Notes: generated from the sequence alone by a model not told the origin. A DNA stretch of 64,000 nucleotides from Lepidodermella squamata (GCA_047495785.1 JBLDXI010000031.1:930001-994000); one strand, 5' to 3'. Shown: positions 11,726 through 38,302, numbered from the stretch's first letter. A program made the numbers and translations.

Positions 11726-11941
11726 ACCGAACACCTTCTGATTGCTGTGATGTTTGATACGAAATTTATTTTAGCGCTCTTCCATTTGTATACCTATGCA
11801 TTGTTTTTCGGCTTTGAGCCTTCCAGCACTGTGATACTTTTTTTTCGATTTATTGCACAATTTTTTCGAGTAAATGACATTTTTAATGAAGATTTTCTGC
11901 CGAAATTAGATATTGATAGAAATAAAGTAAAAACGGCTTGA

Positions 11942-14900
11942 ATGGAGGATTGTGTTCCGGTGGGATCGACGTTGTTCAGGAAGCTGAATTTGTACGCGTT
12001 GGATGAATGGCAGACCACGCCGCACCCTGAGACCAAAGACCTGGTCAATTTGAGCTATTTCAAGCTGTTTCCAGCGCCATTTGGCGGTCCTTTCGGTATT
12101 TTCCGCTTAAATACGTAAAATACAGGAAAATTTGAGATTAAATATTTACAGCTTTGGTTCGCGATGAGTCGAAATTCTCGCAGTTTGTCCGCGATGGCAG
12201 GCCTATGCCGATCAGAATTTACACTACAACATGCTCTGCAAAACCTATTGGAACATTTTTGGTAAATTACCTGTTAGGTTATGATAAAAAGTGGAAGTGA
12301 CTTATTTTGGATTTTTCTCGCATTTTACTGGCTATGTTTAAATTTTTTTACAACGAAAATATCATTTTGATCAAAAAGGTGGTTATTGATTTTACAGATA
12401 AAAACAAAAAATACAGTTTTTCAGTTTCTCAATTTTTGAAAATTGGCCAGTTGTTTTCCTACCAATTTTTTCGAATATTTATATCTCCAATTCGCGAAAA
12501 GTTTCGGAACATTTTTTCGTGAGGCGATTCATGGTACTCAAGTATGAATATAGGATCCTAATTTTGATCTACCTTATTATCAACCCTTTTTTCTTCGAAA
12601 TTGGTAAGATTTTTCAAAATTATGTCCTAAATTCGAGAAAATTGCCCAAATTGCCCAAATACATATTAAGAAAAATAATTCCCGTTATAAAATATACACG
12701 AATTTTTATGGCAATTCTGGCAATTCTTGAGATTTTTCGCATCGCCTCAATTCTAGATATATAAATTCATTTGTTATATTTTCAGTGGGAAGGCGAAAAA
12801 CTGCTGAAAGTCGCGTGGACTCATGACGAAAATCTGCTATGCGTTCAAGTCGACGGCACCATCCGCATCATGTCAATGTTCGGCGAAAAGCTGCGCGAGT
12901 TCAAAATGGACGCAGACGGGCGCGTGGTCGACGCCATGCCAGTCTACCCAAGCGACTTCACCAACACCGGCCTAGTCGCGCTAAACGCCATCGGCCGCTT
13001 CATCTACATCCCGGATATCTCCGCTGAATCTGGGCAGTTGAAGCGATTCGAAGATATACCTCAGTTATCGCTGGACGCTATCAAATGGACCGTAGCTCTA
13101 ACGCCGAACTACACGCGGCTTTTCGTGATAAGCAACGAAAGAGACCTATATCAGACCGATTTAGACGGGACCCTGGTTAAATTGACGTATCCAACGTTGA
13201 GTTTTTCGAAGTTTATCAACGTAGCAGTCAGCGTTGGGTCGATTTACCTCGCGTTATTGACTGATAGATCGGTGATTATCACAACAACAGGCGACCCGGT
13301 TCGAATAACTATCGAGCATGTGCTATCGCAGCCGGCCGACTCGACGTGTTCGTTGTACTGGGTCGGCACAGATGCCGTTGCGTTGTTTCGCCCATCGTTC
13401 GGGTTGACAATCTTCCAAATGGCGTCGAGTGATAACCACTCGGAAATGGTCGACCAACCCGCGTATTTTGTGCCTGAGGTCGATGGGCTGAGGATTGTAA
13501 CGAGTTCAGCTCATGATTTCATGCACGCCGTGCCGCAGGAGGTTTCTGAGGTGTTGGCCCTCGGCTCGCAAAGCCCGGCTATGTACCTGTACGAGGCGAA
13601 TAAGTTGTTCCGCGAGGGCAAGGCCAGCGGGGCGACTGAGTACCTAGACAGCGGGGTGCGTTTGAGGCTTGAAGAGGCCGTTTCGCGGTGTATCTCCGCT
13701 GCGTTGTACGAGTACAAGCCTGGCCTGCAGAAGCAACTGCTTGAGGCTGCGAATTTGGGGCGGTGTTTCCTGCTGGCGACGAGTGCTGGTCGGCTGTCGT
13801 GGCGGGCGGAGACCGCGGAGATGGTGCGCGTCATCAGGATTTTGCGTGTGCTCAACCAGTGTCGTGAATACATGCCTGGAATGCCGCTCACGTACAAGCA
13901 ATTCTGCGTGTAAGTTGCATTTTTTATGGCTTGAATGGGTCTAAGGTTCCAGCTCTAAATTTGAGCTTTTTCTTTTCTCGATCAATAAGGAGTTTTTACT
14001 TTGGCTCTCTGGTATCAACAGCTAGGTAGAAATTTTGTAATGTAAGCCACGATTAAGTGCCTGGATGTAAAACATTTTTAGTACGTAAAAGGTCGGTTAG
14101 GTTTATGACAGAGGTTGGAGAAAAAGGGCATTGTGATTTGGTGCAGTTTTGATCGAGGTAGTGCTCGCCGATGGTACAAAGTTTCTCTTGGTTAGTCGCG
14201 TCACAATGTTGTGTAATTCTTTTCGAAGCCGGTACTACGCTGCTAGGGCAACCGATGTATTGCTATTCGCTTTCGTTACAACTGAGAAGATAACGTTTCG
14301 CAAAGTGTATTTGGGTGCACCATTTGTCGTTGATAGTTGATAGCCCAGTGTTACAGCACCAACAAGTGTATTTATTATGAGAGTGATTTCCAAAGCGAGT
14401 TGGCATTATTTGTTTCAAGGTGTTGGATTTCCAAGTGATTTGCATATTTTCTCCAAAAAATAGAGCAAGCGGTTTGATTGCATCTTTAGCTTTTTCTGCT
14501 ATCCTGTCACCAAGCAACGGCAAAGATAATCTGAAAACGTCAGTGATGGCGTTTTTGTAGGCTCGGCAGAGTGTGTACAGCGTATCATTCGTTTTACGGT
14601 GTTGAACAATAAATTTCTTTTGATGGACACCGAGTGAAAAGAATTAGCTAGGAGTATGTGGTCGGGAACCATTGGCTTTTTGTAAAATTTGTAAATCAGT
14701 TTGGCGGTAAAATTGGTGTAAATCGGATGGTCTTCCATTTTGAAAGTTCTCGAGCAGTGAGCCAACAAAATTCATCATTTCTCGATCGCCTCGTGTTCTA
14801 ACTGACGATTAGGCGCTGTTAGCAAGTTGATAACCGATCCCATTGATTCCACAACCGATTCAATCAGAGAAATCGCATCTCATAAGAATTTGCTCCATGA

Positions 14901-17028: not shown

Positions 17029-17697
17029 AAAGCTCAACAACTTCTCGAACCAATTATTACGTAATTTTTATCAATCAAATTCGACTGCTAATTGTGATGA
17101 TGCGTGTGAACAATAATAATATTGTGGCCTTGATTTTCGATATTAATGTTATTTTCAACGAATTATTACTTATGTTGTATGTCTGTAATATTTATAAATT
17201 TCACCGAGCAATATTCGATATGCTTTGTTTTATTTATCCCGCTGCTATCGCTGCTATTTTCGTGTAATGCTGAGGAACAAGGTGCTTTCTCATGGAGCTG
17301 GGAAATAAAATAATTGATGATCATGTCCTTTGTCTTGCTTTTTTGTTGGTGTTTGGGAACCTGCAGATCTTCATAGAGCCACATTGTTCAAAATTCAGAG
17401 GAATAACAAGAGAAGACAAATGAGAACAAAATATTCTTTCGAGGGTGGCTTTGGTGGCCTTCTTGTAAAATATTGGAAAACCCGATCATACATAATTTTG
17501 GAGACGCCTCTTTGAAAAAATGTGACTGAATCCAACGACTTCGGAATCGATGGATCTTCATTATTTGTTTGAGACGTGGATACTTCGATCAAAGTTAGGC
17601 AGTCAAAAGTGGATTCATCGTCATAGCATTATCCTTTATGTAACACGAAAGCCACTAGCAGCGAACTTTTTTTTGACAGAAAATAGCGCAAAAACAT

Positions 17698-17797
17698 TGC
17701 TCCAGGCGAGGCTCGAACTCGCGACCTTCGCATAACTCAGCGTACATTCAAGTACTGCTTATAAGTACGACGCACTAACCAACTATGCAACTGGAGC
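17698..17797 (-). tRNA. tRNA-Ile(UAU) with 26-nt intron
   Basis: GCTCCAG...CTGGAGC-A acceptor stem, TCGTA/TGCGA anticodon stem, CT-TAT-A followed by the intron, GCGAG-TTCGAGC-CTCGC T arm, and a downstream T5 terminator. Confidence 0.93.
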
Positions 17798-18116
17798 GGA
17801 TGAAAATTATGAATCGTATATGGCTTATAAGCCGACTCAACGACCCTTATATTTTTCGAACGAATCACTTTTATGACGCAACAGGTGAGAGCATGAAGAG
17901 CCTCAATAGTCAAGCGCACGAAATGTTCAGAAATTTCCGCTAAATATCTTGAATTAGCAAGACATAACATATCATAAGTCTTTAGGGGTAATCGGGACTG
18001 ACTTGCTCAGCTCGTTTTGTTCCAGGACTTCCAAGAGCTCTGCAAAGGTAGGACGGTGAGCCTCAGGACACTTCCAGCATGAATTCAACATGATTTCATA
18101 TCTAGAATAGGAATAT

Positions 18117-19065
18117 GAGTATGTTATCATACAAGCTCTCGGCGATAGCCGCTCGTGCTGAATTTTATCTGACGAGGCGTAGCCGAGTCGGGGCACGAGC
18201 GGCTATTGCAGAGAGCGAGGATGCATAACAATTCGTATACCACACCAGATGTTGATCGCTTGACGATTTAAAAATGTTTGCTGAGTATCAGGTGAAGCTA
18301 CAATTTTTCCCAACAATTGTCGCCAAAATTCTGTTTGCAGGGTAACATCAGGTTGAAAAACAACACCTGATGCTGCTCGCGAATTCGAAGCCCATTTTAT
18401 TCTTCATTTCATTTTGCAAAATTTGTTGGTCGATGCAACATCAATTTCCAGGACTAAACACTATGCCAAATGCGTTCCCGGAATAAGACAAATAGGCAAG
18501 AAGCTGATGCGCTTAGAGAGCTCAAAAAAAATAAAAAATAATCCTCAATTTGAAAATTCACAGGAAAATTCCAGATGAATACTAAAAAATAATTAACCTC
18601 GGCTGCGCCTCGGTCGTGATTTCGAAATTGTCCTCGGCTGAGCCTCGGAAAATGGCTCGGTTTCACCTCGCTGAATTCACTGGGCCTTGCGGCCCATGTT
18701 GGTACAACATCATTTTCTTGTTTCAACCTAATTCCCGCTAAAGTTGATAAATTTCAAAATCCTAAATTTTACAACTTATCAGGTTTACGATCCTACCTAA
18801 ATTACTTATCAGTTTTACGACACCAGCGTCTAAATTACTTATCGGTTTTATGGCCCCATCTAAATTACTTATTTATCTGCATCGAGCTCGAAATTTCAGT
18901 AACGATAAATTTTATCCACTTTAACGATCTCTATTTTTAGTAAAAATCTGGCGCCTCAGCAAACACAGGTGTCACCAGCCTGTGAAATAACAAAATCCTA
19001 GCATTTTATCATTTTTGGGACGCTAATGCAAAGAGTCAGGCGATCAACAGGTGGTGTAGTATACG
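18117..19065. mobile_element. Non-autonomous ~950-bp element (copy 1) with terminal hairpin and asymmetric inverted repeats, in the last RTK intron
   Basis: Near-identical to 36470-37450. The 31-bp IR 18234-18264/19035-19065 matches 27/31. Internal ~31-bp tandem repeats at 18774-18872. No TSD. Confidence 0.85.
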
Positions 19066-20261
19066 GTCATCAAAGCCTTTTGGGATAAGTTGTTACATTT
19101 TATCAGGGCAAGAACTCGGTTGCTCGAGGCGAAGACCGTTTGAAACTTGAACAATCACCTCGAAGTTATTGTAACCGACATACCGGCATACCGGCTCCGA
19201 GCGGCATACTGAAATAGCAGCGATCTTTGAATATAATTCCTATTACAACGTGCTGAAACTTACGAGAGAATATTTCCCACATAACAACACCAAAGGACCA
19301 AACGTCACTCTTTGGCAAGAACAAATGGTTGCACAGTGATTCAGGAGGGTACCATCTTGTCGGTATTAGACAATTACTCGTTTCGCTTGATCTATAGTAA
19401 GGCTGGCCGGAGGAGACTAAGCGGGACAAACCAAAGTCAGATATCTTCAACATTTCTTCGTTCGACACCAGAACGTTGCGACACGCCAGGTCCCTATGAA
19501 GGCAGTTGCGGGAGGACAGGTATGCCATACCTCGACAGATGTGCTTTGCATATTCGATGAGTTTCTCCAGCTTCCAGAGCCCAATTTCCTTCGAATTCAG
19601 ATGGCGATGTAGGTTTCCTTTTTTCATAAATGGCACTATAATATTGGCTTGGCCGTCAAGAGAGGCAATCCCAATCAAAGACAGAACGTTTTCATGGTTG
19701 AACTCTTTCATTAGCAAAGCTTCTCGTACAATGAAACAACGTCCGTGCAGGTCCTAGGAAATATATTTTTGACGGTAATCTCGACATCTCGTGAACCTGG
19801 CCTTCTTAGGGTCCCTCTGTAAACAGCACCAAAGAAGCCTTGCCCGATTAGATCAGCAATTTCGATGCAAGAGCTGTGAATGTTGATGTCCTTGATCAGA
19901 GGTATCAGATCGCGGCCTTCTGGAGAAGACTCGAGCATTTGCTGAAAATCGCTGAATGCTGTTATGTGCATGGATTGCCGGCGAGTATCAATGATGCCAG
20001 GCTTTGTTTTTCCAGAGTTTCGGCGAGTATAGATCACGTACCAGATAGAAATGCCCAGAAGAATTAGGGCTACTGCGCCTGTTCCTGAAGTGATTATCAT
20101 TGCCGTCCAGCCTTTTCATACAAAAATGCAACAGAGCTAAAGTAGGCCAACTTATGACAGTTACCATCGGAAGCAGTTAGACTGCCTAGGTCTGTGATTG
20201 GACTGCTTTCAGTTTCCGTTATAAGTTTCCGTTTCCGTTCAGTTTCCGTTCAGTTTCCGTT

Positions 20262-21045
20262 CAGTGGTTCTCAAACTATTTTCGCTCCCGGTCAAAAATG
20301 GCGGCCGGTTGGCGACCTTTACGGCCGCATTGCCTCTTGAACCCTCAATCGGCCGCTTGTAATGATAAAATAGGACCTTTCAGGCCGCACGCCTCTACAT
20401 TCGAGAATTTCGAGTTTTCGAGTGCGCTTCTAAGCGGATTGGTTATTAAATTAGGGTTTTGAGCAGCGGGTCTTGACTGAATTTTTACGCGACCCTTGAT
20501 TGGTCAACTCAAGTCGATTCAACTCAAGTCGCCACCCACCACTCTCAAAAAGTTAACAATTAAAAAGTGAAAGAAAGTTTGTGTAATAATTTCCAAATTC
20601 CAAAATTCCTAACCCGTGCATTGATTAACCTTTGCGAGCGAAGCGAGCTTTAGCTGACAATATTTTTCCATAATTCTTTGTGAAAATATGCTAAAAATGC
20701 GTTAAAAGTGGCTTTGAGTCTTTCTCGATGCGATGGTTACCATTTTATTGCTTAAAAGTCAAATATCTTATAAATTGTCGAATTCGAATCAAAATAGGTA
20801 TTGAAAGATTTGAAAGTGAATCAGCGAGCGAAGCGAGAAACTTTCAAGAAAATTGTGGCTATTTATCATTCGGATACGTCGAAGTTTGCTGGATTATTGC
20901 CCAAGTTATGCGAAACCCTGGACTATTCCCCTCGAAAGAGCCGTCCGGCCGCACGCAATGCATGAGATAGGCCGACCTCTGCCGGCCGCCAAAGTGGGCC
21001 TCGCCGGCCGCATGCGGCCGGAAAAACGGGGTTTGAGAACCACTG
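20262..21045. mobile_element. Non-autonomous hAT-type DNA transposon
   Basis: Perfect 15-bp TIR CAGTGGTTCTCAAAC/GTTTGAGAACCACTG and GC-rich CGGCCG subterminal motifs. Probable 8-bp TSD CGTTATAT (21046-53) / CGTTATAA (20217-24), displaced by filler DNA. Confidence 0.88.
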
Positions 21046-22693
21046 CGTTATATCAACAATTCCGGGCGTACCAATAGTTGAAATTTGAGGCCCGCCGGTT
21101 AATGTCAAGGCCGTTGGTCGAGGGTACGAAGGATTGTCAAGAAACTGTGGACACTTTGTCCCGGTTACATTCAGCAAGCTGCAAGCTATCGTTTCTTGAA
21201 TCCATCCGTTTAGAGGAATGAGGTTCAAAAAACGCACGATTCGGGAGCTGTTATCACACGAGTCTTCCTTCAAGTAGATGCCGCCCTGGAAATAAAAATT
21301 GAGTGGGATGCAGGATGCAGTGAATTATTGCTTATAATCACCAGAAGTAGCTGAGTTCCAGTGCTGGTTACGAAATCGAAATAGGTTGCAAAAGAGAGTG
21401 TCGAACCTTCCGTTAAGTCACATGGCAAGAAGTCATGATTTGCACCCGGTGTAAAGCACAAGTAAGTGTCTGAATCGCAACCAGGGCCATAAGGGGTAAG
21501 CTGGCCAAATAAATATTCATAATTTCCGTCATTAGGACACTTGGGACAAGGTTCAGAATAGCTCTCAACGGTCAGCCCGTTACGTGGGGATCGATGCCCT
21601 ACGACAAAGACGAAATTCCACCAATATATTTCGTGACCGGCTAAAGGAGTGAACAATGTTGTATGTTGTTAAAACTTGTCTCAGAGAGGCTGATATCTAT
21701 TGGTTTCCCGAGTCTCGCAATAGCAAGGCCTTTCTTTTCTCCTAGGATCTTGATCGGGACTAGCATTGAGGATATAGATGCGAGCAAACAGTCGTACGGC
21801 ATGATGAAGTGATGCTCATCGAGCATAGCCGAGACACAATTCGTCGTTTTAGTAATGACCCGTCGGAAGAAAGGAAACTGCCCGGCATCTGCGTAGATTG
21901 GCCAATCCGTTGTAGGATATGGAATTGTTGGGAATCCCCTGTAAGACATGGCTTGCCCTGGCATGAGCTGTGGGATCGACTTCTTTCTACAGGTGTTGTG
22001 CGCCAGCATTATCTCATCGAAGCTGAGGCTTAAACGATGCATGGATAAGCATGAAATGGCATCTAATCCATTCCCACTCAGACTGAAGCTAAAAGTGTCG
22101 ACACGTGTGAAGTAAGTAAGATTCGATTGGTACCATAGAGAACGGAGTGAGGGACAAGCATTGTTCGAAGTTTCAGGCTGCTCGAGCAGTCTGAAACTTT
22201 CCCTGATTACTCACGTGCGTCATGATTAGTCACAATGGTTCGATATGAATATTATTTTTATCAATTTTTTGACGGCAAAGCGTTTATACGTCTGCAAAGT
22301 AGGGAAATTATTCGGAAACCTTGCGGAACACCTTGGAACGCCTCTACGGCACATTTCTACTTCACAGCTGTTAAAAATTTATCAATTTTCAAGTTTGAAT
22401 AAATGAATTTTATTAATTAATCAATGCAAAAATAGCACTGGGTTGACTTTCACTGGGGGATCTTGGATAAAAGCATCTGGTGCAATCGCGGATTGAATGC
22501 AAAGCGAGCGCAGGCTGCGTGCTCGCCGGAGAAAATGGTAAAGCACCTTACCTGGATTTCTCGCTCCACAGCTGTCCAGCTGACGCTGATTATAAAAGCA
22601 CCATCATAATCAGCGTTATTAGTTACGCTCACTTTTTTGGCCACTCTGTATAATATCGATGAATCGATCGATGCTCATATAACGTGTAGATGC

Positions 22694-22948
22694 AGACCCA
22701 AGAATTGGACCTAATTACTTATTAGACCCAGATTATGGCGCAACAATCGAAATTTCACTGCATGTCAAGTTGAGTTCTGTGCGTTCCTTGATGTCTTTGG
22801 TCCCAAATTTGATGCCAACAATTTGCCGTCAGACGATTTGCCTTCCGACTCTTCGTTGAACCGGAATAAAAGGTAATAGAAATTTCGACAGACCCGGGAT
22901 TCGGATCTAAATATCGGATCTCGCTGTTTATGTTTGGCAGTTGAAGTG
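22694..22948. mobile_element. Diverged partial copy of the TTAA (piggyBac-like) MITE at 26760-27256
   Basis: Reverse-complement similarity to 26760-27025; ends ...GGCAGTTGAAGTG followed by TTAA. Confidence 0.7.
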
Positions 22949-23722
22949 TTAAACAACTTATCGACAACTGAACCTACAACGGCCTTGGACGGAGTCCCTG
23001 AATGCGTTCTTAAATCGCTGGGAGATTTCTTAGCACTTCTAATATTCCACAAAATCCTCACGTAGGGTACCGAACACTTGGATACTGATACACAAAAATT
23101 TAACCAGCAACTACAGACCTATGCATTTCCATTCTATCATTCTAGCCGTCGTTTAAGAAAACAAGCTAATTTTCAATGACCATTTCGAAAAGGCATGGGC
23201 TAAGGCGAGAAAATGGCTTTTCGCACTGAAATTGGAAGCGCAAAATGGCTTCAATCGAAATTGCCTCAAAGCCAACAGTCTTATCTTTTCGCACAAAAGA
23301 TCTTTTGCTACAAAGAAATTTACTTGGAGCTTATTTTTGCGGCCGATCTAAAAATAGCAACGTTGTCGGTCGGAGAATAAGTGTCGCATTGTACCTGTGG
23401 CCGGAGCTAAGGCTGTTCGGCCGCCGAAAATGCCGCCGGTGAAAAAGTTTTCGGAGAATTGGTCTACAGTCTTATTAAACCTGAAAAGGGTCAACTCTGA
23501 CCATGCTCTGAAATTTGGTTTAGCATAATAGCGCTGCCGTTGGCCACATGCTTTTTTGCTGCCGGAGGCCTGCTTTATTTAGCTTCAGCTTATGATGGCA
23601 GGCATGCGCGTGATAATCACTTGCCTAACACAATACATATGATGCCATGGATGCATGATATCGCTTAAAGATATAATCAAGCTGCATACCTTATTTATAA
23701 ACAGTCTGTTTCAGTTAAAATC

Positions 23723-26700
23723 ATGGCTAAGGTGTCAATTCTTAATACCCTGTCAGCTTTTCTCCTTATTTTTAACAAATATTCGATTCCCTTTGAGCTG
23801 CCCTACAATATGGATTTGCAAGATATCAACTTCATTTCAATTATTCCCAGATCAGGCTCGATTTACAGCGACATAAGTGCTTCACCCGAGAGGTTTTTTT
23901 TATACAAAATGTTACTATGTCTAGTAATTTAACAGCAAGTATTCCAGTATGTTCATATATCCTCTAGAATTCTTCAACGACACTTTCAGCTTTTGCTCGG
24001 AGGACAAATTTTTCCCCGCCTGGAATTTACTACAAGCGCAGCTTTTCCGAGCGATAGCGGATGTAAACAGCAATCGCTCAATTTTGGGCGGCTTGAATCT
24101 TGGCTTTTGCTCGATTAACAGCTTTCAGCTTGCAGCTTTCCAATTTATGCCAGCCGATGGCTCGCTCGACTTGCGGCAAACCGAATAGCCTTAGCTAAAG
24201 AAATTGATTCCATTTTCAAATTGGGCGATCCCGTTCCATTGATAATAGGGGCATTAGAGAGCGACGTCACAGCGGCTGTTCTAGATCGAGCCCAAACTCT
24301 AGATATGCCTGTGATTGATTTCGGCTCCACTGCAGTGGAGTTTGACAACCGAGATAAATATTCGCTATATTCAAGAACAGTTCCTTCGGATGCAGATCAA
24401 ATTTCGGCTATTTTGGATTTGCTGGAAAGTCTGAATAGATCGTCCTGCGGGGTTATACTATACAGTCAAGGCGCATATGGAGAGTCCGCTCACGGTGTTA
24501 TCCGAAATCACTTGAGCTCTTGGCAAGCGGTCAAAATAACCTTTTCGAATGCTGACCAAATAATGAAGCTGTTAAACGCATCACAAGTCGAGACAATTGT
24601 GTGCCTCTGTGAGCGATGGGCATTTTCAAAAGTTGATTTAGTGCTGCGGCAGGTTGATTTCCGAGCAAAGCCTTTAGTTATCGCTGGCCACCTTTGGAAC
24701 GGCGATATGAACGATAAAGATTTCACAAAACCGGGATCCAATTACGACTTCATAGCTTCAGCATTAGCCATGGAGCCAGACTACACTTTCCCAGCTTATT
24801 TAAGCAGCACGGCGTTGGATTACGACCAATCAGGCGAGGGTAATACTATTTAGCTTCGAATTGATAGAAAATTATACACATCTGAACAATAATTTTTCAG
24901 CTTCACTAATTGAGTTTTGGAAATGGGCGATAGCGAAAAATACTCTGCAGTTCAACATTTTACCCTCAGGTATGGATGCTGTATGGATTTTTAAGGAATA
25001 TTGACCAGAATTTAATAGGCATAACGGTTGATGAATCATCATTTCCTGTGAGCAAATACACTTCGAGCATTCAAAAAGCTGTCCTTGCTGCTGTGTATGG
25101 CTTACGTGATTTTCTCAACGCAAGATGTCCCCCAGGAAGTGCAGCGTTGAAGGATAGATGTCCGAGGGCAACGCTGAATCGCTTATTGCTGGATGGCCGA
25201 GAGCTCCAGCGGTACATCGAAAAAGCTAAATTCAATGTACCCGGCATCAGAGAAACTTTCTCGTTCAACGAAAACAATTCTGTCGCGGGGCGATATAATT
25301 TTTCATATTACAACAGCGAGAAATCGCAATGGATAGAATTCCTTATATTGGGCGAAAGACAGTGGGCTTAAGTACTTCGGAAACAGCTCAATGTTCCTTA
25401 TTCAGGCCGCGAACTACACATGTGGCAATGACACAGTTGTGCACAAGTCAAATCAACTCTGGTTCGGATATGGATTGTTTAATACTCCTTGTCATGCAGT
25501 TCGTAAGAAAACCTATAAGATGAGCACTCAACCGAATTGCTCGGATCAGCTCGACGTATGTAAAGTTGTGACTCCATCTAGACAGGAAGCAATTAAAGGT
25601 TGGGATCTGGCAGTCCTGATTACTATCGCCATCTCTCTGGGGGTGATTTTTCTCTGTCTCACCGTTGCAACAACGACTTTCTTCATGCTAAACCGCAGGC
25701 TCACGACAGCCCCAAGCCGCAAACATGGACGATTAGACGAACGAGCCCTGGATGAAATATGGAATAGTGCGAATTTGATCGAGATCCCGCTGAAAAACTG
25801 CGATCAAATCGAAGTTGCTCTTGAGCAATACGAAGCTGGCGAAGAGCTGACAAAGAAATTCGTTGGCTTTGTTACAACCAGCGGTTTGAAATTATCAAAA
25901 AAAAGCATAGCTACAGGACATTATGGGGTTGTTTATGCCGGAGAATTGCAGGACGAGAGAGTCGCCGTAAAAATCCTCAAGTCTAGGAAGCCGGCGGATG
26001 TCGTCGAATTCATCCAAGAGGGTCTGTTAATGGCTTCGTTTGAACACGAAAATGTGCTGCGATTTCGAGGCATGGCTATGATGTCGAACTGGCCCGTTAT
26101 CGTTGTTCCTTTCATGCAAAACGGCAGCTTGCTGAAATTTCTCTTGAAGCATTCAAAATTGAATGGCATCTCTCAAAGCAAACTGTGGACATTCTCTTGC
26201 CAAATATGCAAGGCTATGGTCTATCTCTCATCTGAAAAGTTCATCCATCCATGACATCCATCGGGATCTGGCCTGTAGGAATATCTTAAATTGGCGATGA
26301 AAACCAAGCTATTATTGCTGACTTCGGTCTATCTCGCCAGCTTTACGAAAGCGAGTATTATAAGCCTGCAAACGCAAGCCGACCATTGCCGATTCGCTGG
26401 CACCCACCAGAGTCGCTTCGAAGCGAGAAATTTGGCGAAAAGAGTGATGTATGGTCGTTTGGCATTGTTTTGTGGGAGATTTACAGCCATGGCGAGCGGC
26501 CATATGCCCATATCAAGGAAGAAGCCGACGTTTTTACAGCTGTTTTGGATCGTAACGAGATGCTCCAACTACCCGAGAACTGCCCTAACGAAATGTAAGC
26601 TGTTTGTGTTGACTTTTCAAATAATCTAAACTGCAAAATAGTTACGCGATCATGCAAAGTTGTTGGAAACTCGCAATAGACGAACGACCTTCGTTTTCGC

Positions 26701-26759
26701 AGCTATTAGAACAGTTGGAGATGAACAGAGATACCGCACACTCTTCTGAGTCGATTTAA
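23723..26759 (+). pseudogene. Venus-flytrap (ANF-receptor/class C GPCR-type) receptor tyrosine kinase, VKR-like architecture; frameshifted
   Basis: Signal-like N-terminus. VFT motifs RAIADVNSNRSILGGLNLG, IIGALES, PVIDFGSTAVEFDNRDKYSLYSRTVPSD and AVLAAVYGL. TM LAVLITIAISLGVIFLCL. Kinase motifs GHYG, VAVK, HRDLACRN, DFG, YESEYY and SDVWSFG. Introns ~23893-23968, 24840-24900, 24970-25018, 26595-26641. Four frame-breaking lesions. Confidence 0.85.
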
Positions 26760-27256
26760 CACTTTAACTGCCAAAAATAGACTGCTAGATCCGATATTTG
26801 GATCCAAATCCTGGGTCTGTAAGTCTTTTTTTCGGGTCAACGATGCGTTGTAGAGCTAAAAGCCTGACGGCAAAGTGTAGGCCACGACTCGGCGGTTCTT
26901 TTGACACCAAATTCGGGGCCATAGACTTCAAGGAACGCAGAGATATCAACTTGTAAACACATTGAAATTTCGATTTTTGCGCCATAATCTGGATCTAATA
27001 ATTAAGTCCAATTCTTGGGTCTGATTTTTGGCTATAATCCAAACTTTCGACGCTATTTCACAGTCATTTCTAAAGACATGCTCACACCTTGAGGACCCGA
27101 GTTTGGTGTCGAAAGAACCGCCGGACCATGGTCTACACTTTGCCGTCAGGCATTTTGCCTTGCGACGCATTGTTGACCCGAAAAAGGACATTTTGGCAGA
27201 CCCAGGATTTGGATCCAAATGTCGGATCTCGCAGTCAATTTTTGGCAGTTAACGTG
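26760..27256. mobile_element. MITE with ~160-bp imperfect TIRs, TTAA-type (piggyBac-like)
   Basis: CACTTTAACTGCCAAAAA...TTTTTGGCAGTTAACGTG with long inverted arms. Left flank TTAA, right flank TCGA. A related copy at 22694-22948 ends at TTAA. Confidence 0.8.
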
Positions 27257-27329
27257 TCGATAATATGCATATGGAATGTTGTTTATTTGGCTTGTAGAGA
27301 GTATTTAGGAGAAATATTATTTACTTGGC

Positions 27330-29359
27330 ATGCATTTTGTAGTATTATTGTTACTGCCGTACCTTGCAAGTAATGCCTTGGTGCAACAGACTGAGCTCGG
27401 GGCAAGTACACCATTGCGGTTGGGCTTCGTGTTGCCGATCCACTATCAGGATAATAAATCAAGGTAAACACGGCTGGCAATCAAGCATAAAACCTAAAGT
27501 TTTAAATTTCAGCGGAAAATGTGGAAAGTTAAACCACGACATGGCAGTTTTGTCGGCATTTGCTCGCTGGTACCTTGAAAAATTCAATTTTAATTACGGA
27601 TTTTTGGGCCTCTCGGACCAAAAAGTCGGTTTTTACATGATCGACTCTTGCTCAAATTCTGCTATAGCGCTGGAACATTTTTTTAATCAACGCGCGCTAG
27701 CCGCAACAAATCCTCGCATGACCATCCCGATTTACATCGGACCTGCAAATTCTGAGCTCGCTTTCACCCTTGCACCAGCTTTTGAATCTGCCAAAGTGAC
27801 CTTGGTTAGTTGGGAAATGCCGGTATTGACGTGGTTAAGTTGTTCATTTACAGGTTGATTTCAGCGGCTCGTTCAGCGAGCTAGGCGACAAAACGAAGTA
27901 TCCTCGATACGCAAGGACCAGCCCAGACGATAAGAGCTTAGCAATTGCTATCGCAGATTTATTAGTCGATGCTTTTAATCAAACGTGCACGCTCGTAATC
28001 TATGACGACACGAATTTTATTGACCGATCCGCAGTCGAAGATCTAAGGACCGCCTTCAGAAACACTGGGCTGTGTGTTGCCGGTGAAATAGATTCTAAAA
28101 CTCCCTTCCAGGCACTCAACACCTCTGCTACTCACGTCGTTTGCCTTTGTCGAACAAATACATTATCGAAACTTATGAAAGCACTCAGAGGACGAAAAAC
28201 AAGCATCAAAATTGTTTTGGCGAGGTGCGTTTGAAAAAAGTTCAATCCTCACCTAGGGTTTATCTAGCCTTTTGAAATTGAGGGTGGGTAGTCGTAAAAT
28301 GGGATCGTAAAAAATGGACATAAAAAGCTCAAAAATAGCAAAAAGCTCGAAAGTTTGGGGTTGGGTAGCCAAATTTTGTGGGTGGGTTGAGGGTGACTAG
28401 ATAAACCCTTGCTCCTCACCAAGTTAATACAAGCGCTCTTGTAGTGATCCTGACGGAGGATTTGAAAACTTCAGGGAGAAAGTGGATGTAGGTCTAGTCA
28501 AGATTTCGCCTTTCCTTGGATCGATTCCGGGTGAGAGTGATTTTCGAAGTTGGCTAGCCAAAAGGCCTGTGTTGGACTCAACAATTGAACCTTGGCTCTC
28601 TGAGTGGATCGATGGTAGGATAATTAGCCTGTGCAATTCCTAGCAATGATTGCTATTGTTTTAGAGGGCGGAAATGTGGCGGAAATGAAATTAACCAGCT
28701 TTGCTTATCATTTGGGTGCGGCGATTTACTCAGCCATTCTAACTATGGAGAAAGTGGGGAAAGAATACTGTGCTGCTAAAAAAGAAAACTTATTCAACTG
28801 CTTGGTCAACGGAGATGATGCTTTCGCAAATTCTTCGAGGTTAGAAAGCCATGTTTACGAAATGGACCCTACCTCACTGGGACTGCCGTTTTCTTGGGAG
28901 AAAGATGGAAGTCCACCAGCAAGCTATGCATTTTACTCAATGGGTAGTGATTCAATGTGGACAAGAATTGCTACCTGGAACCTTCGGGAACGCGCTATTC
29001 GTGTCATCGATAGCAATGAAGCTAGAACAGCCTTCGACAGCCTTACAGGCCTTACCTCTTCCACCTGCCCCGCTGATATTTGCGACCGGAAAATGAATGC
29101 TATGAATATATCGATCAAGCAGTGTCCAGTAATTCGACCGATCGCAACATCGGTGACTACGCCAATTAACGAAACAAACGCAACGACCGCAGCATGTCAA
29201 ATTACGTCGAAAGCTGACAATGCGGCAGCTATCGTAGGGGCGATCCTCGGCTTTTTGCTGCTGGTCATTTCGATTGTTTTCATAATTTTCTGTTTGAGAA
29301 GTCGGCAAAAAGTCAAAAGGACTCAACAGCGGCTAGCAGAGCATAATGCGCCGCTATAA
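27330..29359 (+). CDS. Single-pass Venus-flytrap receptor with ~20-aa cytoplasmic tail and no kinase; exons 27330-27463, 27513-27804, 27853-28224, 28445-28614, 28664-29359
   Basis: Signal peptide MHFVVLLLLPYLASNA. VFT motifs LGFVLPIH, GFYMIDSCS, YIGPANS and VDFSGSFSELGDKTKYPRYARTSPDD. TM AAIVGAILGFLLLVISIVFIIFCL. The spliced frame is open; AATAAA at ~29407. Confidence 0.82.
28253..28411. mobile_element. G-rich MITE with 8-bp TSD (P- or hAT-type), copy in an intron
   Basis: TIR CTAGGGTTTATCTAG/CTAGATAAACCCTTG; flanks ATCCTCAC/CTCCTCAC; homologous to 32816-32981. Confidence 0.85.
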
Positions 29360-32160
29360 ATTCGACCTTGCTTTTTTGGTTTATTTTTTAAATTATATTT
29401 ATATGAAATAAATTATGCTGATTAAAACTACATTATTTTGCAAATTAGTTATTGCGTCTTCGTTTTGTAAATTAAGGAAACGTGAAACGCGGTTTTAGCG
29501 CAGCTGAGTCGTTGATCCAAGTTGAACCTGAACTTACTACAATGAACGCAATGTCATATCTCTGCTTGCTATCTATCTACTACTTGGCATTCTGAGGCGA
29601 ATAGATCTACGTTGTCTACTACTATCTTGAATCCGTCGAATGCAGCTTCTTGTCGTGTATTTTGTTAGAATGATAGGAAAACATTTAACCCAAAGTCTTC
29701 AGGATCTTGGTTGTTTTGGAGGCGCTATCTGTTCAGGAATAGCCTAGTCCGTTGTGGTAGAATTGGGAAAGATAATTCCATTATACTCCATTATAGTTGC
29801 TAACGAACGGGGTCTTTGACTTTCACGAAAGTTAGCATTTGCAATAGAGAACTTGGTTACTTGCTTTGAGCTTTGACTCTGTCTGTTACTCTGTCTGCGA
29901 TGATTTCTATCTCTGCCAGAGGAGAATAAGCTGAGGGCTGAGGCGTCCAAATTTCTTCGTGATAAACATAGTACATAGTTAAACGTAGCCATGGACTCTC
30001 GTTAATGAGCTAATCTGGAAATAGTGCCGTCTGCTGTCATAGCAAATGCTTATCTACCTATGCCTTGCCAATTATGTTGGCAGTGTGCCAATCTACGGAA
30101 CAAATTGCTATTCGTTTGTTGATGCTCGTTCTTCTATTTTTTTATTGACAGGCCTATGAACTCAATACATTCATTTCCCATCGAATGTCATGTCATCATA
30201 TTTGAATTATGATTTTAATTGTCGGAGCGATCTTTTGCGCTTACAGATGATACGCAATACCTTAATCCTTAATCTCATTTGTGGCTAGAAGGCATGGAAT
30301 CAGATTGACACTATCATTCGGAAGCTGGCAAGCTTGACTTCTGCAGCTGACAAGTTTATACTGTCAATCGAAGCCCTTTTGGATAACCAGAAATGGTGGC
30401 GGAGACAATCTTTCGGGATGCTGACGAGCCAGAGAGAATACCTAACCATGCTTGATTCTATATTCTATATTTTAATTTCATTCGCTTTTTATGTTTCATA
30501 GGCGTTAATATCGAATTTTGTCGGAGGATGATCTAAAATGAATGCTGGAAGTTGTTACCAATTCGGCTGTGTGGATAAAATGATATTCTACTCGGAGCCG
30601 AATCGATAGTTGGCAGGGCGAAAATTATTCTACTGATACGGATACGAGTATGACAAGTTGGAAATCGGAAATCAGTCAATGGGAAAATCAGTGCAAATCA
30701 TTGACGATATGATCGTATCGTTTACGAGTCACGAGTCGACAAGCAAAATGGCTCATCAGCTATCTTCAGCTATTTTAAATTCGCAATCTTTTAGCGATTA
30801 TCGTCGATAAAATAGCGGCTAATATCAACTCACTTGGACGATCCCTGATTTAATTTGTTCTTCCGTTGTTTTTTCTTGTTGATATAAATAAATGTTGAGC
30901 TTGGAAAACTCCGAAAAGTGTGTTTTGTCGACGCCCCAATTATCATGCATGGTCAAAGTTTAATTAGCAAGTTTGATTAGTAGCACAGCAGCAGCAGCAT
31001 CAGCAGGTAGCATCAGGCCGAAGATTGAGCTGAAATCGAGCGTTTTATCGTTTGAAGTTTAATTTCAGTGCAAGATGCAATATTTCCGCGATTTTCACTC
31101 TCACGCACGACCCACGATTTTCGATGACCAGTTGAGGGAGCCTCGGATTTGAGTCTAATTTTCAATCAGTGATGCGCAAACTTTTCAATACCCGGCGATT
31201 ATGACAGCCGGAAATGTCCATAATTTTCCATGGACCGATTGCACACATAATTGCACGTATTAAGCCCGAAGGCCAACCGGCCGCAAAAAAGGCTGAGACC
31301 AGCGGCCTGAGGCCTTAAAATCCAAGTTCGCGAACTAAAAATAGCCGAAATTGTGTTCGAACACAACCTGTCCATCTCGATTCATTTAATTCAACCGGCT
31401 ATTGGTTGATTACAGAAAAAGCTTTCAACGAAAAAAATAGTCGTATACAAGCATTTGGCGCAATATTTTCAAAGGTCTAGTTGCTCATTTATTGACGGTT
31501 TTTATGCCTGGAAAATACAAAGACCAACGACCAACCAGGTTCAAACTGAATATGGAGTTATCGCGTGAAAAATGGTCCAAGAAAATAAAGCAAAGGTTGC
31601 AATTTCAAAATTTTCGACCATCTCTTTTGGGCAACTTTAATAACAAATTATATATCCATCGGAACGAAAAACCGGTGGCATCAGCCGATTCCTTGTGAAA
31701 AACTGCAATAGAATTGCCAGACAGCCGATGGCGTTGTCAATTCAGGGCATCTTAAAATTCTGCACTACAAAAAATAATTCGGTGAAAACCGAGTGAAATT
31801 TCGCTGTTTAGTAATAACTGACTAAGAGTACTGAGTTTAGTAATCACCAAGGTAAAAACCGAATGTGGACTTCGTTAAAACCGAGATTTTGGTAATTACT
31901 ACAGCGTGAAAATTAACCGAGTAGGATAAAAGTCGGTTAAAACTCGGTTAAAACCAGATTCGTGAATACTTCAGTAGTTACTTTTCAATAAGTTTTTCTC
32001 GGTTTTCACCGATTGTCATTAACAGGTGTCATCAAAAAGCTAATTACTAATTACTCAGCCTCCTGAGGTCTCAGAGGCCGGGCACCATCCCAGATCCACT
32101 CCTTACATCGTTTGAAAGAATCGAAAGACAAATTACTTGACTTTTGTCGAAGTTGACTTG

Positions 32161-32232: not shown

Positions 32233-32815
32233 GCTCATATTAAGTGACGGTTAATAGGGGTATATAAGTTTCAAATCGGGTTTCTTCGCTTTTCTAACGC
32301 ACGCGTAAGGACTTAAGGCGGATGGTAAGAGGCCATATCCCACGTGGTCACCCTGGCGTTTCGTTCCCATATTGTTCATTTTGAATATTTGGTCTATTTT
32401 TTTTTTATTTTTTTATTTTTTTATATTTTGAAAATGTTTTCTAAAGCAGTTTTTCATGAGGAATCTCCTGGTGTAATTGGTTTTCCTCTAAGATGCATGG
32501 CTATAATCAGGTACCAGAGTGAGCACGTCAAAATTTGTTTATATTTACTCCATTTCTATTTTTCCTAATTATTATTATCCTAGTAATAATTATCGACTTC
32601 TATTATATGCTTATAGATTTCAATCCATCTAAATCTAAGCATATAAAAAGGCTATCTTGAAATCTAAGCCGATTAGTCTGCGAATTTTGTTTGATAGAGT
32701 TTGGAAACTACAAAGTAGAGTGGACAATTGATCCAAACAATTGACCCATGCGATTCTCAGAAGACTTTTAAATAATTTGACATGTCTATAGCGTAGAACT
32801 CAACGCTCAACGACC

Positions 32816-32981
32816 CAAGGGTTTATCTAGCCTTTTCGAATTGGGGGTGGGTAGTCGTAAAATGGGGTAAAAATGGACCTCAAAAGCTCAAAAATAGCCA
32901 AAAAAGCTCGAAATTTGGGGGTGGGTAGCCAAAGTTTGGGGTGGGTTGGGGGTGGGTTGAGGGTGGCTAGATAAACCCTTG
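32816..32981. mobile_element. G-rich MITE with perfect 8-bp TSD, nested in the CACTA element
   Basis: 17-bp TIR CAAGGGTTTATCTAGCC/GGCTAGATAAACCCTTG; TSD CAACGACC at 32808-15 and 32982-89. Confidence 0.92.
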
Positions 32982-33761
32982 CAACGACCTATAAGGCAGT
33001 TTTACCTCTGAGCGTTTTATTCCACAATTTAGCTTTCCTCCATGTCATCCACGTCAAAGCTAAAAAGTCGGTAAATAATCGGTTTATACAAATTATTAAC
33101 AGAGATATTTACCTAGAACTCGGTTATTACCCTAACTTTGCTGAGGTGATTACCAAGAACTCGGTTATTAAGAATAGTTTACTTAGGTGATTACCGAGTG
33201 CTTAGTTTTCACCAAGTTTCCGAAAAAGTGAATACCAGGCGTCAGATAATCACCGAGTTTTTTACCAACATTTTGTAATAACGGACTTTCGTGCTCGGTG
33301 AAAACAGACTTATTTTTTGTAGTGTGGCTCTGGCTAAAATTTTGCGGCAATGCGATGTTCACGATTTTAACTTTCGAGGCTCATTTATTGTGTGTAGAAA
33401 GTTTGAAGCACGAGGCCGGCGCCTCGCGACTAAACAACAAAATGCGCTCTAGTTTATCCACCTTGACGAATAATCAAACAAACGGCGCATTTTCAAATTT
33501 TTCCTACATGAAAATGTGCTCCCGGCCGCGAATCATTTCTCCGAATTCATGCTCGTTACTCATTAATTTAATATGAGCAGTGAATTACGTGGTGTTTTTC
33601 TGAGTGTTCCTCGCCGCGTGCCAGAAAAACAGTTGAGCAGTCGATGCCGAGTCTCTCTCGCAAATCTCGCACACATCGCACACATATATACATGTTGGTC
33701 CCGTTGAAACGATGAAACGATGAAAACAAACAAAGAAGTCAAAATGCTCAAAATGCTGGAA

Positions 33762-37772: not shown

Positions 37773-38005
37773 GGTCGAATAGAAGAATGGTATTGCAAAT
37801 GTTTTTGATTGATACTTCCGCTATGCCGCAGTTAATTTATTCTGTATTCGCAGTCTTTTTTTTTGGCCAATATAATTCATTTGACAGATGTTGATATTAA
37901 ATTTGTGACCCAATAAAATAACAGCCATATGTTCAACTCGATTAAGAAATACCTGTGGCCTTATCGAATTGATGACGTAAATTTTTAATTAAAATAATAA
38001 AAATT

Positions 38006-38105
38006 TGCTCCAGGCGAGGCTCGAACTCGCGACCTTCGCATAACTCAGCATACATTCGAGTACTGCTTATAAGTACGACGCACTAACCAACTATGCAACT
38101 GGAGC
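38006..38105 (-). tRNA. tRNA-Ile(UAU) with 26-nt intron
   Basis: Exons identical to 17698-17797; 2 substitutions, both in the intron; T-run downstream. Confidence 0.93.
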
Positions 38106-38302
38106 AGCTGAAAAATATGCATCGCTAAAGCTTCATGGCTTAATATTTAATATAATAAAGCATGCTTCAATAATGCTTGCTGCCTCTAAAATGCATTTGA
38201 AAATTGTCCAGCTATTATAAGGCTAAACAAGTTAAGAATACATCAGCCTTTATTTCTTTATAGATTACAGATAAAAAACTTGTTTGGCCTACATATGGAG
38301 TC

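What the first reader, a model, noticed from the sequence alone, without database searches (positions are those of the whole stretch)
17972..29359. Modular receptor cluster: one MET/AXL-like kinase module on two unrelated sensors, plus a kinase-less partner
Seen: two RTK genes lie head-to-head (17972-22645 minus, 23723-26759 plus). Their kinases share the less common HRDLACRN and P.RW.PPESL motifs and the same phase-2 last intron (CP.(K/E)I|Y.IM..CW). One ectodomain is trypsin-like and the other is a Venus flytrap. An intact flytrap+TM gene without a kinase follows directly. Inference: a lineage-specific family in which a kinase cassette was shuffled onto different sensors, with paired signalling and non-signalling receptors and rapid birth-and-death. 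This is the best candidate for an undescribed system in the window.
Basis: partly seen in the sequence, partly recalled or inferred. Interest (0 to 1): 0.85.

Follow-up and report, generated by a model that had tools for sequence, protein, structure and literature searches.

The report
Receptor kinase cluster with swapped sensors
Three neighbouring single-pass receptor genes of an unidentified invertebrate show one private branch of MET/AXL-like tyrosine kinases joined to different outer sensors, next to a kinase-less flytrap receptor; this is a new variant of known receptor shuffling, and both kinase genes are broken in this assembly.

Summary
The observation mostly holds. Two receptor tyrosine kinase genes lie head-to-head. 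An intact, transcribed flytrap+TM gene (553 aa, 20-aa tail) follows.

- **Kinases:** they are only 42% identical. They sit with metagenome-derived relatives in a clade with 100/98 support, marked by P(I/T)RWxPPES, sister to MET/RON+TAM. Ectodomains in that clade are flytrap, CUB, or gene 1's Cys-rich domain.
- **Gene 2:** it is a flytrap (mGluR-like)–TM–kinase receptor. It is not a canonical Venus kinase receptor: its kinase is not insulin-receptor-like and the VKR flytrap motif is absent.
- **Gene 1:** the "trypsin-like" ectodomain got no support from Pfam, PDB, the atlas or AlphaFold. Only a cysteine framework fits. No signal-peptide exon was found.
- **Frame breaks:** the window's gene 2 has 8-, 13- and 1-nt insertions that a DNA run lacks, so an allele without them exists. 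The flytrap-to-kinase join still needs a 40-nt GC-AG or 25-nt GT-AG intron, otherwise translation stops at 25369. Gene 1 has one or two frameshifts that I could not check against reads.
- **Not tested:** pairing of gene 3 with gene 2.

First-stage notes, all unchecked, describe similar kinase receptors with other ectodomains elsewhere in this genome.

Verdict: new variant of a known kind, moderate interest.

The parts
17972..22190 (-). Gene 1: partial receptor tyrosine kinase. Exons 22190-21676, 21640-21372, 21285-21072, 20111-19264, 19208-19097, 18101-17972. Made of a Cys-rich ectodomain (333 aa, 13 Cys), TM and kinase. No start or signal-peptide exon found.
   Evidence: Pfam kinase 1.7e-50. 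Splice model in frame at every junction except as noted. No signal-peptide exon.
19727..19728 (-). Gene 1 frame break in the kinase N-lobe: codon 'TA' lacks one base between ...DVVSL and REALLMKEF. Not checked against reads.
   Evidence: Sequence reading, and comparison with gene 2's DVVEFIQEGLLMASF.
21641..21675 (-). Gene 1: 35-nt GT..AG candidate intron. Relatives' introns are about 60 nt, so it may instead be a second frameshift inside a continuous exon.
18113..19065 (.). 953-nt repeat that fills gene 1's last (phase-2) intron (19096-18102). A 96.7% identical copy lies at 36466-37450.
   Evidence: blastn of the window against itself.
20029..20103 (-). Gene 1 transmembrane segment
   Evidence: Hydrophobic stretch followed by RRNSGK.
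19334..19498 (-). Gene 1 catalytic loop HRDLACRN, DFG, activation loop with YY, PTRWYPPESL
23723..26759 (+). Gene 2: signal peptide, mGluR-like Venus flytrap, Cys stalk, TM, tyrosine kinase. Exons 23723-23876, 23968-24839, 24901-24969, 25019-25365, 25406-26594, 26642-26759. The read-supported form is 908 aa.
   Evidence: ANF_receptor 9e-14 and kinase 5.4e-24. Model built. RNA joint at 24970-25018.
24123..24130 (+). 8-nt frame-breaking insertion present in the window. Left out in the DNA run X1 contigs laid there (2 contigs, depth 277 of 328).
   Evidence: table 4. Frame restored on removal.
26249..26261 (+). 13-nt frame-breaking insertion just before HRD. The aligner places it at 26242. Absent from X1 (depth 192 of 192).
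26289..26289 (+). 1-nt insertion after HRDLACRNIL. Absent from X1 (192 of 192).
25362..25405 (+). Unresolved join between flytrap and stalk/TM/kinase exons. The frame needs a 40-nt GC..AG intron (25366-25405) or a 25-nt GT..AG intron (25362-25386). Otherwise there is a stop at TAA 25369-25371 and an ATG at 25391 opens the TM-kinase ORF. X1 agrees with the window here.
   Evidence: (contig 25288-25666, 0 differences).
25607..25690 (+). Gene 2 transmembrane segment
26595..26641 (+). Gene 2 last intron, 47 nt, phase 2. Same codon position as gene 1's last intron.
27330..29359 (+). Gene 3: signal peptide, Venus flytrap, Cys stalk, TM (29222-29296), 20-aa tail. No kinase. Exons 27330-27463, 27513-27804, 27854-28224, 28445-28614, 28665-29359. 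553 aa, intact.
   Evidence: ANF_receptor 7.5e-13. Model. RNA depth 7-24 and a spliced joint at 27805-27853. Flytrap matches relatives' flytrap-kinases at 9e-22.
26755..27257 (.). Two inverted copies of a high-copy MITE-like repeat between genes 2 and 3. A further copy at 22693-22953 lies upstream of gene 2.
   Evidence: X1 word depth 6,500-12,000 against about 190 for single-copy sequence.

Best explanation
The locus holds three single-pass receptor genes from a lineage-restricted expansion in an unidentified, intron-poor invertebrate.

Genes 1 and 2 carry tyrosine kinases of one private clade. The clade's hallmark is P(I/T)RWxPPES, often with HRDLACRN, and it is sister to MET/RON and AXL/MER/TYRO3. 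During its history the clade has been joined to different ectodomains:
- an mGluR-like Venus flytrap (gene 2 and several relatives);
- CUB (one relative);
- a Cys-rich domain of unproven fold (gene 1).

Likely working, inferred from class C flytraps and from Venus kinase receptors: the flytrap dimer closes on a small ligand, probably an amino acid. The Ser and Thr that hold the alpha-amino-acid group in mGluRs are aligned and kept. The closure brings the kinases together for trans-phosphorylation of the activation-loop YY. Neither tail has a MET-type docking site.

Gene 3 is a flytrap of the same broad family with a 20-residue tail. It cannot signal by kinase. It most likely acts as a ligand sink or as a kinase-less dimer partner, in the manner of NPR-C beside NPR-A/B. 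This is inferred, not shown.

In the assembled haplotype both kinase genes are interrupted. For gene 2 an allele without three of the breaks exists at full depth in a DNA run. Its function then hinges on how the 25362-25405 join is processed.
For: - Domains.
- Kinase clade: 97 in the quick tree of 139 rows. 100/98 in the careful tree of 51 rows, sister to a MET/TAM group at 99/84.
- Motif PIRWxPPES is confined to the clade.
- Ectodomains of clade members are ANF_receptor (P0148, P0036/P0165, P0158; P0133 by alignment) and CUB (P0166).
- Relatives encode flytrap-TM-kinase in one about 890-aa ORF on metagenome contigs that also carry animal genes.
- Nearest named kinases are HGFR-like, UFO, TYRO3 and MER. 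No ANF_receptor+kinase protein other than the query itself, and no insulin-receptor architecture, appears among the top 120.
- Best PDB hits for gene 2's N-lobe are MET and RON.
- mGluR alignment keeps Ser (gaLeSdv against gpGsSsv) and Thr (gSTa against sATs).
- Genes 2 and 3 are transcribed and spliced in an RNA run of the same species.
- The three window-only insertions are absent from X1, which otherwise shows 0 mismatches over 863 nt.
- A second copy at 91% identity has both its indels in introns.
Against: - No insulin-receptor or canonical VKR sequence could be put in the tree, so 'not a VKR' rests on rankings and motifs.
- The clade's inner branches are unresolved, so the number and order of ectodomain swaps is unknown.
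- Gene 2's flytrap-to-kinase join has no good canonical intron, and X1 agrees with the window there. The protein may stop at 25369.
- Gene 1 lacks a start and has one or two frame breaks not checked in reads.
- Ligand, dimerisation and any gene 2-gene 3 interaction are untested.
- Gene 3's flytrap is only about 25% identical to gene 2's.
Confidence: 0.6

Rival explanations
1. Decaying locus: genes 1 and 2 are pseudogenes, fixed or segregating, left over from the family's turnover. Only gene 3 is functional. Transcription of gene 2 is residual.
For: - Four certain and two probable frame breaks fall in about 4.8 kb of kinase-receptor coding sequence. None fall in about 9 kb of other coding sequence in the window (gene 3, ELAC2, ferroportins, Vps16). 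By my count the chance that all fall in the two kinase-receptor genes is about 0.015 for the four certain breaks and about 0.002 for all six.
- The 8- and 13-nt insertions partly copy neighbouring sequence, as real slippage events do.
- Gene 1 has no signal-peptide exon.
- The 25362-25405 break is shared by window and reads.
- Relatives' introns are about 60 nt, so the 25-40-nt rescue introns are doubtful.
Against: - X1 carries gene 2 without three of the breaks at 192/192 depth and with 0 substitutions over 863 nt. This is odd for neutral decay.
- The kinase ORFs keep every catalytic motif.
- All other splice junctions of both genes stay in phase.
- A divergent second copy keeps its indels in introns.
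Confidence: 0.3
2. Gene 2 is naturally split. A secreted flytrap protein ends at TAA 25369-25371. A separate stalk-TM-kinase protein starts at ATG 25391. The two work as a two-part receptor.
For: - The stop and the in-frame ATG lie 20 nt apart, and X1 agrees with the window there.
- A first-stage note (s1-368566, unchecked) describes a similar flytrap/7TM split elsewhere in this genome.
- Another unchecked note (s1-379852) suspects a polycistronic operon in this genome.
Against: - The second ORF has no signal peptide.
- Relatives encode the receptor as one ORF.
- No RNA evidence for two messages.
- A simple 1-nt insertion in a G run explains the break.
Confidence: 0.07
3. Gene 2 is an ordinary orthologue of the Venus kinase receptor (VKR) family of invertebrates.
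For: - Same architecture: flytrap, one TM, tyrosine kinase with activation-loop YY.
- VKRs occur widely in protostomes, and some carry M-P-P-E in place of M(A/S)PE (PMC3703292).
Against: - VKR kinases are insulin-receptor-like and monophyletic (PMC3703292). This kinase's nearest named relatives are MET and TAM, and InsR is not in the top 60 PDB hits of any exon.
- The VKR flytrap motif GY(V/I)WFLPxWL is absent.
- The family has several paralogues in relatives. VKR is usually a single gene.
Confidence: 0.05
4. Gene 1's ectodomain is not a trypsin fold but another Cys-rich beta domain, for example MAM or jelly-roll-like, or new.
For: - No S1 protease signal in Pfam, PDB or the atlas.
- 62 of the 100 best atlas hits for exon 2 are MAM clusters, at a weak score of 0.60.
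- The stretch between the 'His-loop' cysteines and the 'Asp102' site is about 20 residues shorter than in trypsins (my reading).
Against: - The cysteine framework and spacing fit chymotrypsin-fold landmarks in order: C-x15-C, C-x11-C-x3-E-G, G-I-x6-C, and W-I 18 residues later (landmarks from memory).
- Other first-stage notes report similar domains on MET-like kinases in this genome (unchecked).
Confidence: 0.4

Closest known systems
Venus kinase receptors (VKR; Schistosoma, insects, annelids, molluscs, echinoderms, Nematostella)
   Same: Flytrap of class C GPCR type, single TM, tyrosine kinase with activation-loop YY. The Ser of the amino-acid site is kept. VKRs are activated by amino acids such as L-arginine (PMC3703292, PMC2680970).
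   Different: VKR kinases are insulin-receptor-like and form one clade, usually with one gene per species. This kinase is sister to MET/TAM, the VKR flytrap motif is absent, and relatives hold several paralogues. Gene 2 works like a VKR but is most likely a separate invention.
MET/RON and TAM (AXL, MER, TYRO3) receptor kinases
   Same: Nearest kinase relatives (38-46% identity). They share the ES ending of the W..(L/I/P)ES motif where most tyrosine kinases have APE.
   Different: No Sema/PSI/IPT or Ig/FN3 ectodomain. PPES in place of ALES or AIES. No C-terminal docking tyrosines. The clade stands outside the MET/TAM group in the tree.
Choanoflagellate flytrap kinases (Monosiga UTK12, Salpingoeca RTKS)
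   Same: They show that flytrap-plus-kinase architecture can arise outside the VKR family (PMC3703292).
NPR-C beside NPR-A/B (natriuretic peptide clearance receptor)
   Same: For gene 3: an ANF_receptor-type flytrap, one TM and a short tail, existing beside full-length signalling receptors with a related ectodomain.
   Different: Gene 3's flytrap is mGluR-like, not NPR-like. The partner enzymes are tyrosine kinases, not guanylate cyclases. A clearance or decoy role is only an analogy.
Lineage-specific receptor kinase expansions by domain shuffling (choanoflagellates, sponges, other holozoans)
   Same: One kinase subgroup combined with many ectodomains (PMC8662651).
   Different: This is a particular, apparently undescribed clade in an unidentified invertebrate lineage known otherwise only from metagenome contigs.

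Membership tests
Venus kinase receptor (VKR) | Extracellular Venus flytrap of class C GPCR type | tested here: met
   ANF_receptor 9e-14. mGluR1/5/8 at 1e-8.
Venus kinase receptor (VKR) | Single TM followed by a tyrosine kinase with activation-loop YY | tested here: met
   This holds for the read-supported allele and only if the 25362-25405 join is in frame.
Venus kinase receptor (VKR) | Kinase of insulin-receptor type, grouping with other VKRs | tested here: not met
   Nearest named kinases are MET and TAM. InsR is absent from the top 60 PDB hits. No other ANF_receptor+kinase protein is in the top 120. The test is indirect: no VKR or InsR sequence was in the tree.
Venus kinase receptor (VKR) | Flytrap motif GY(V/I)WFLPxWL, present in most VKRs | tested here: not met
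   Regex search of genes 2 and 3 found none. Motif taken from PMC3703292.
MET/RON family | Sema-PSI-IPT ectodomain | tested here: not met
   No such Pfam hit in either gene.
MET/RON family | Kinase inside the MET clade, with C-terminal bidentate docking tyrosines | tested here: not met
   The clade is sister to, not inside, the MET/TAM group. The tails have no tyrosine.
TAM (AXL/MER/TYRO3) | Ig plus FN3 ectodomain and KWIAIES motif | tested here: not met
Private 'PIRWxPPES' receptor kinase clade (window + ENA metagenome relatives) | Monophyly of the kinase and the shared motif P(I/T)RW[HYW]PPES | tested here: met
   Support 100/98. Motif found in all members and in no other fetched kinase.
Trypsin-like (S1/chymotrypsin fold) domain, catalytically dead (gene 1 ectodomain) | Profile or fold match to S1 peptidases | tested here: not met
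   No Pfam, PDB or atlas match. The AlphaFold fragment model was unusable. The spliced domain could not be submitted because no reference exists for it.
Trypsin-like (S1/chymotrypsin fold) domain, catalytically dead (gene 1 ectodomain) | Conserved disulfide framework (42-58, 191-220 and so on) and C-terminal W-I helix | tested here: inconclusive
   Spacings fit. The landmarks come from memory and were fitted after the fact.
Kinase-less decoy or clearance receptor of NPR-C type (gene 3) | Flytrap + TM + short tail beside full-length relatives | tested here: met
   This covers architecture only.
Kinase-less decoy or clearance receptor of NPR-C type (gene 3) | Binds the same ligand as, or dimerises with, the signalling receptor | not testable with these tools
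   Needs binding or co-expression assays.

The most novel reading that the evidence does not exclude
The animals of this lineage built a second, independent 'Venus kinase receptor' system on a MET/TAM-like kinase. It has dedicated kinase-less flytrap partners (gene 3) that form heterodimers and tune amino-acid sensing. The kinase-bearing members also segregate as working and null alleles in natural populations. This would be a receptor repertoire under birth-and-death or balancing selection, like chemoreceptors or immune receptors.
Probability: 0.15. Interest if true: 0.55.

Novelty: new variant of a known kind. Interest (0 to 1): 0.35.

Why it matters
If it holds, flytrap-plus-tyrosine-kinase receptors arose at least twice in animals, once on an insulin-receptor-like kinase (VKR) and once on a MET/TAM-like kinase. 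That would be a clean case of convergent receptor design. It would also give a natural test of whether flytrap closure can drive any dimer-activated kinase.

The clade gives a handle on a poorly sampled invertebrate lineage, which is otherwise seen only in metagenomes. Here one kinase type has been wired to several sensors.

The contrast between broken reference alleles and intact read-supported alleles is a practical warning for annotating such families.

Tried and rejected
- **Trypsin test.** I ran Pfam at E up to 10, PDB phmmer at E up to 10 and two atlas searches, with no S1 signal. AlphaFold on the 171-aa first ectodomain exon gave pLDDT 39.8 and was unusable, so no fold search was run.
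- **Representative search.** A search of 1.84 billion proteins with gene 2's 287-aa exon found no hit above 50% identity and no self hit. This genome is therefore not in the protein libraries, and paralogues could not be counted.
- **The search for homologous proteins with P0165.** It returned only its own cluster, because the words came from the divergent flytrap. That search was wasted.
- **Organism identity.** The ferroportin search gave a 63% metagenome relative and Mytilus at 31%. Rfam found only two tRNA genes. I could not name the phylum. My guesses of rotifer, flatworm or tardigrade are unsupported.
- **Exon 4/5 join of gene 2.** I enumerated all GT/GC/AT..AG/AC introns, aligned three variants to four relatives, and inspected relatives' introns. 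None of this discriminated between variants.
- **Gene 1's ectodomain against CUB relatives and all fetched loci.** No similarity.
- **Kinase remnant after gene 3.** None found.
- **Gene 1 against reads.** Not tested. Reads were laid on 23450-29400.

Full report
**What is in the sequence.**
The window is eukaryotic: 43% G+C, with short GT..AG introns near 50 nt. It also carries Vps16, two ferroportins and ELAC2.

In 17972-29359 there are three single-pass receptor genes.
- Gene 1 (minus strand) has a 333-aa Cys-rich ectodomain, a TM segment (20029-20103) and a tyrosine kinase (Pfam 1.7e-50).
- Gene 2 (plus strand, 23723-26759) has a signal peptide, an ANF_receptor-type Venus flytrap (9e-14), a Cys stalk, a TM segment (25607-25690) and a tyrosine kinase (5.4e-24).
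- Gene 3 (27330-29359) has a signal peptide, a flytrap (7.5e-13), a stalk, a TM segment and a 20-residue tail.

I built exon models by hand from the sequence. The coordinates are in the parts list.

**The shared kinase features are real.**
- Both kinases read HRDLACRN and P(T/I)RW(Y/H)PPESL.
- Both have a phase-2 intron inside the codon before Y.IM..CW.
- Among about 300 fetched kinases, HRDLACRN is a minority form (8 against 195 HRDLAARN).
- PIRW[HYW]PPES occurs only in the window genes' own clade.
- The kinases are not close copies: 42% identity over 262 residues (41-47% per exon).

**Where the kinases belong.**
An exhaustive search of 1.84 billion representatives with gene 2's TM-to-HRD exon gave no hit above 50% identity and no self hit. 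This genome and its near kin are therefore absent from the protein libraries.

The best named relatives are HGFR-like and UFO/TYRO3/MER kinases at about 40%. The best PDB hits for gene 2's N-lobe are MET and RON. The other exons are less decisive, and the insulin receptor never enters the top 60.

Trees:
- The quick tree had 139 rows. The careful tree had 51 rows.
- Both put genes 1 and 2 in a seven-row clade (97, then 100/98) with proteins known only from ENA metagenome contigs.
- That clade is sister to a MET/RON+TAM group (99/84) and apart from Eph, JAK and EGFR-like outgroups.
- The clade's inner branches are unresolved.

Its members carry these ectodomains:
- flytrap: P0148, P0036/P0165, P0158, and P0133 by alignment;
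- CUB: P0166;
- an ORF fragment holding only the kinase: P0026.

The relatives' contigs hold animal genes such as LIM-homeobox, nuclear receptor, NACHT and neprilysin. They encode flytrap-TM-kinase as one ORF of about 890 aa. One such contig shares the window's ELAC2-ferroportin order.

So [quoted passage not shown] is supported. A recent cassette swap is not.

**Gene 2 is not a canonical VKR.**
VKRs are defined by a class C-type flytrap, one TM and an insulin-receptor-like kinase. They form one clade and are usually single-copy. Most carry GY(V/I)WFLPxWL in the flytrap (PMC3703292).

Gene 2 compares as follows:
- It shares the architecture, and its flytrap is mGluR-like (1e-8).
- The Ser and Thr aligned to the amino-acid-binding pair of mGluR1/5 are kept.
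- Its kinase is MET/TAM-like.
- The VKR flytrap motif is absent.
- No canonical VKR appears among the nearest kinases.

The same paper notes VKR-like architectures in choanoflagellates, so independent origins are not unprecedented. I could not put VKR or InsR sequences in the tree, and that remains the main gap.

**State of the genes.**
As written in the window, gene 2 is broken three times:
- an 8-nt insertion at 24123-24130;
- a 13-nt insertion just before HRD (26249-26261);
- one extra A after HRDLACRNIL (26289).

Laying the contigs of three public runs on 23450-29400 showed the following:
- Run X1 has even depth of about 190 over exons, introns and spacers, so it is DNA.
- X1 lacks all three insertions (277 of 328; 192 of 192; 192 of 192).
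- X1 is otherwise identical over 863 nt.
- With the insertions removed the gene reads as a 908-aa receptor with all catalytic motifs.

One problem remains in both window and reads. Exon 4 (frame 0) and exon 5 (frame 1) can only be joined by a 40-nt GC..AG or a 25-nt GT..AG intron. The best canonical intron (25362-25405) shifts frame, and otherwise TAA at 25369 ends the protein 20 nt before an ATG that opens the TM-kinase ORF. Alignment to relatives could not choose between these readings. Relatives' introns are about 60 nt.

Gene 1 has these defects:
- a 1-nt gap at 19727/19728 in the N-lobe;
- a doubtful 35-nt intron at 21641-21675, which may be a second frameshift;
- no detectable start or signal-peptide exon.

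I had no reads call left for gene 1.

Frame breaks are confined to the two kinase genes. About 9 kb of other coding sequence in the window has none: gene 3, and ELAC2 and the ferroportins checked against a relative. By my count the chance that all breaks fall in the two kinase genes is about 0.002-0.015. The breaks therefore look biological (null alleles), or they are tied to local assembly trouble in a polymorphic region. They do not look like random error.

X1 also holds a second copy of the flytrap region at 91% identity and about a quarter of the depth. Both of its indels fall in introns, which hints at constraint.

**Expression.**
Run X2 is an RNA library of the same species, with most laid contigs at 99% identity or more. 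It covers genes 2 and 3 at low depth and shows spliced joints at 24970-25018 and 27805-27853, both 49 nt GT..AG. No joint across 25362-25405 was listed. The table shows only the best-supported joints and the contigs are short, so this says nothing either way.

**Gene 1's ectodomain.**
Every profile or embedding test for a trypsin fold was negative. One atlas search gave a weak MAM lead (0.60). AlphaFold on the largest exon failed (pLDDT 39.8).

What remains is a cysteine framework whose spacings match chymotrypsin-fold landmarks in order, with Asp, Ala and Glu at the triad positions. That is my reading, and the landmarks come from memory. I rate a dead trypsin fold at roughly even odds.

**Gene 3.**
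It is intact, spliced and transcribed. Its flytrap matches the relatives' flytrap-kinase ectodomains (9e-22 and 1e-19) better than gene 2's (2.5e-9, about 25% identity). It belongs to the same flytrap family but is not a recent copy of its neighbour. No kinase remnant follows it. A role as ligand sink or kinase-less dimer partner is inferred by analogy with NPR-C and with obligate flytrap dimers.

**Verdict.**
This is a new variant of known kinds (VKR-like architecture, receptor kinase domain shuffling) in a poorly sampled lineage. Both kinase genes are damaged in the reference haplotype. First-stage notes, all unchecked, report further MET-like kinases with other ectodomains elsewhere in this genome.

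Noticed in passing
window 17698-17797 and 38006-38105 (minus strand): Two tRNA genes found by Rfam (51.9 bits each). They span 100 nt against a 71-nt model, so they probably hold an intron. ARAGORN missed both. Their surroundings are 93.7% identical (17691-17816 against 37999-38124).
   Followed up: partly
window 18113-19065 and 36466-37450: A repeat of about 950-985 nt at 96.7% identity. One copy fills gene 1's last intron, which would otherwise be about 45 nt, like gene 2's.
   Followed up: partly
window 22693-22953, 26755-27023, 27023-27257: MITE-like high-copy repeat on both sides of gene 2, with two inverted copies between genes 2 and 3. Word depth in the DNA run is 6,500-12,000 against about 190 for unique sequence.
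   Followed up: partly
window 24375-25068 (run X1): A second version of gene 2's flytrap region at about 91% identity and about a quarter of the depth. It is a divergent allele or a paralogue. Its two indels lie in introns, and 10 of 19 listed substitutions fall at third codon positions.
   Followed up: partly
window 42762-56778 and L001: ELAC2 followed by tandem ferroportin genes. The same order occurs on an ENA metagenome contig (ERZ23486764), whose ferroportin is 63% identical. The nearest named ferroportin is Mytilus at 31%, so the organism's lineage is barely represented in the protein libraries searched here.
   Followed up: partly
window 28252-28412 and 32815-32982: A short repeat (84% identity) inside gene 3's 220-nt third intron. 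Raised depth (about 1,000) in the DNA run.
   Followed up: no
window 29365 (run X2): An RNA contig ends 6 nt after gene 3's stop codon and runs into a SMART-type cDNA adaptor sequence. This is a library artefact, not a mapped transcript end.
   Followed up: no
P0248, P0233 (fetched proteins): Other odd receptor kinases in the MET/TAM neighbourhood: a GH16-glycosidase-like ectodomain on a kinase from a metagenome contig, and a tardigrade protein with PGRP/amidase domains and two kinase domains.
   Followed up: no
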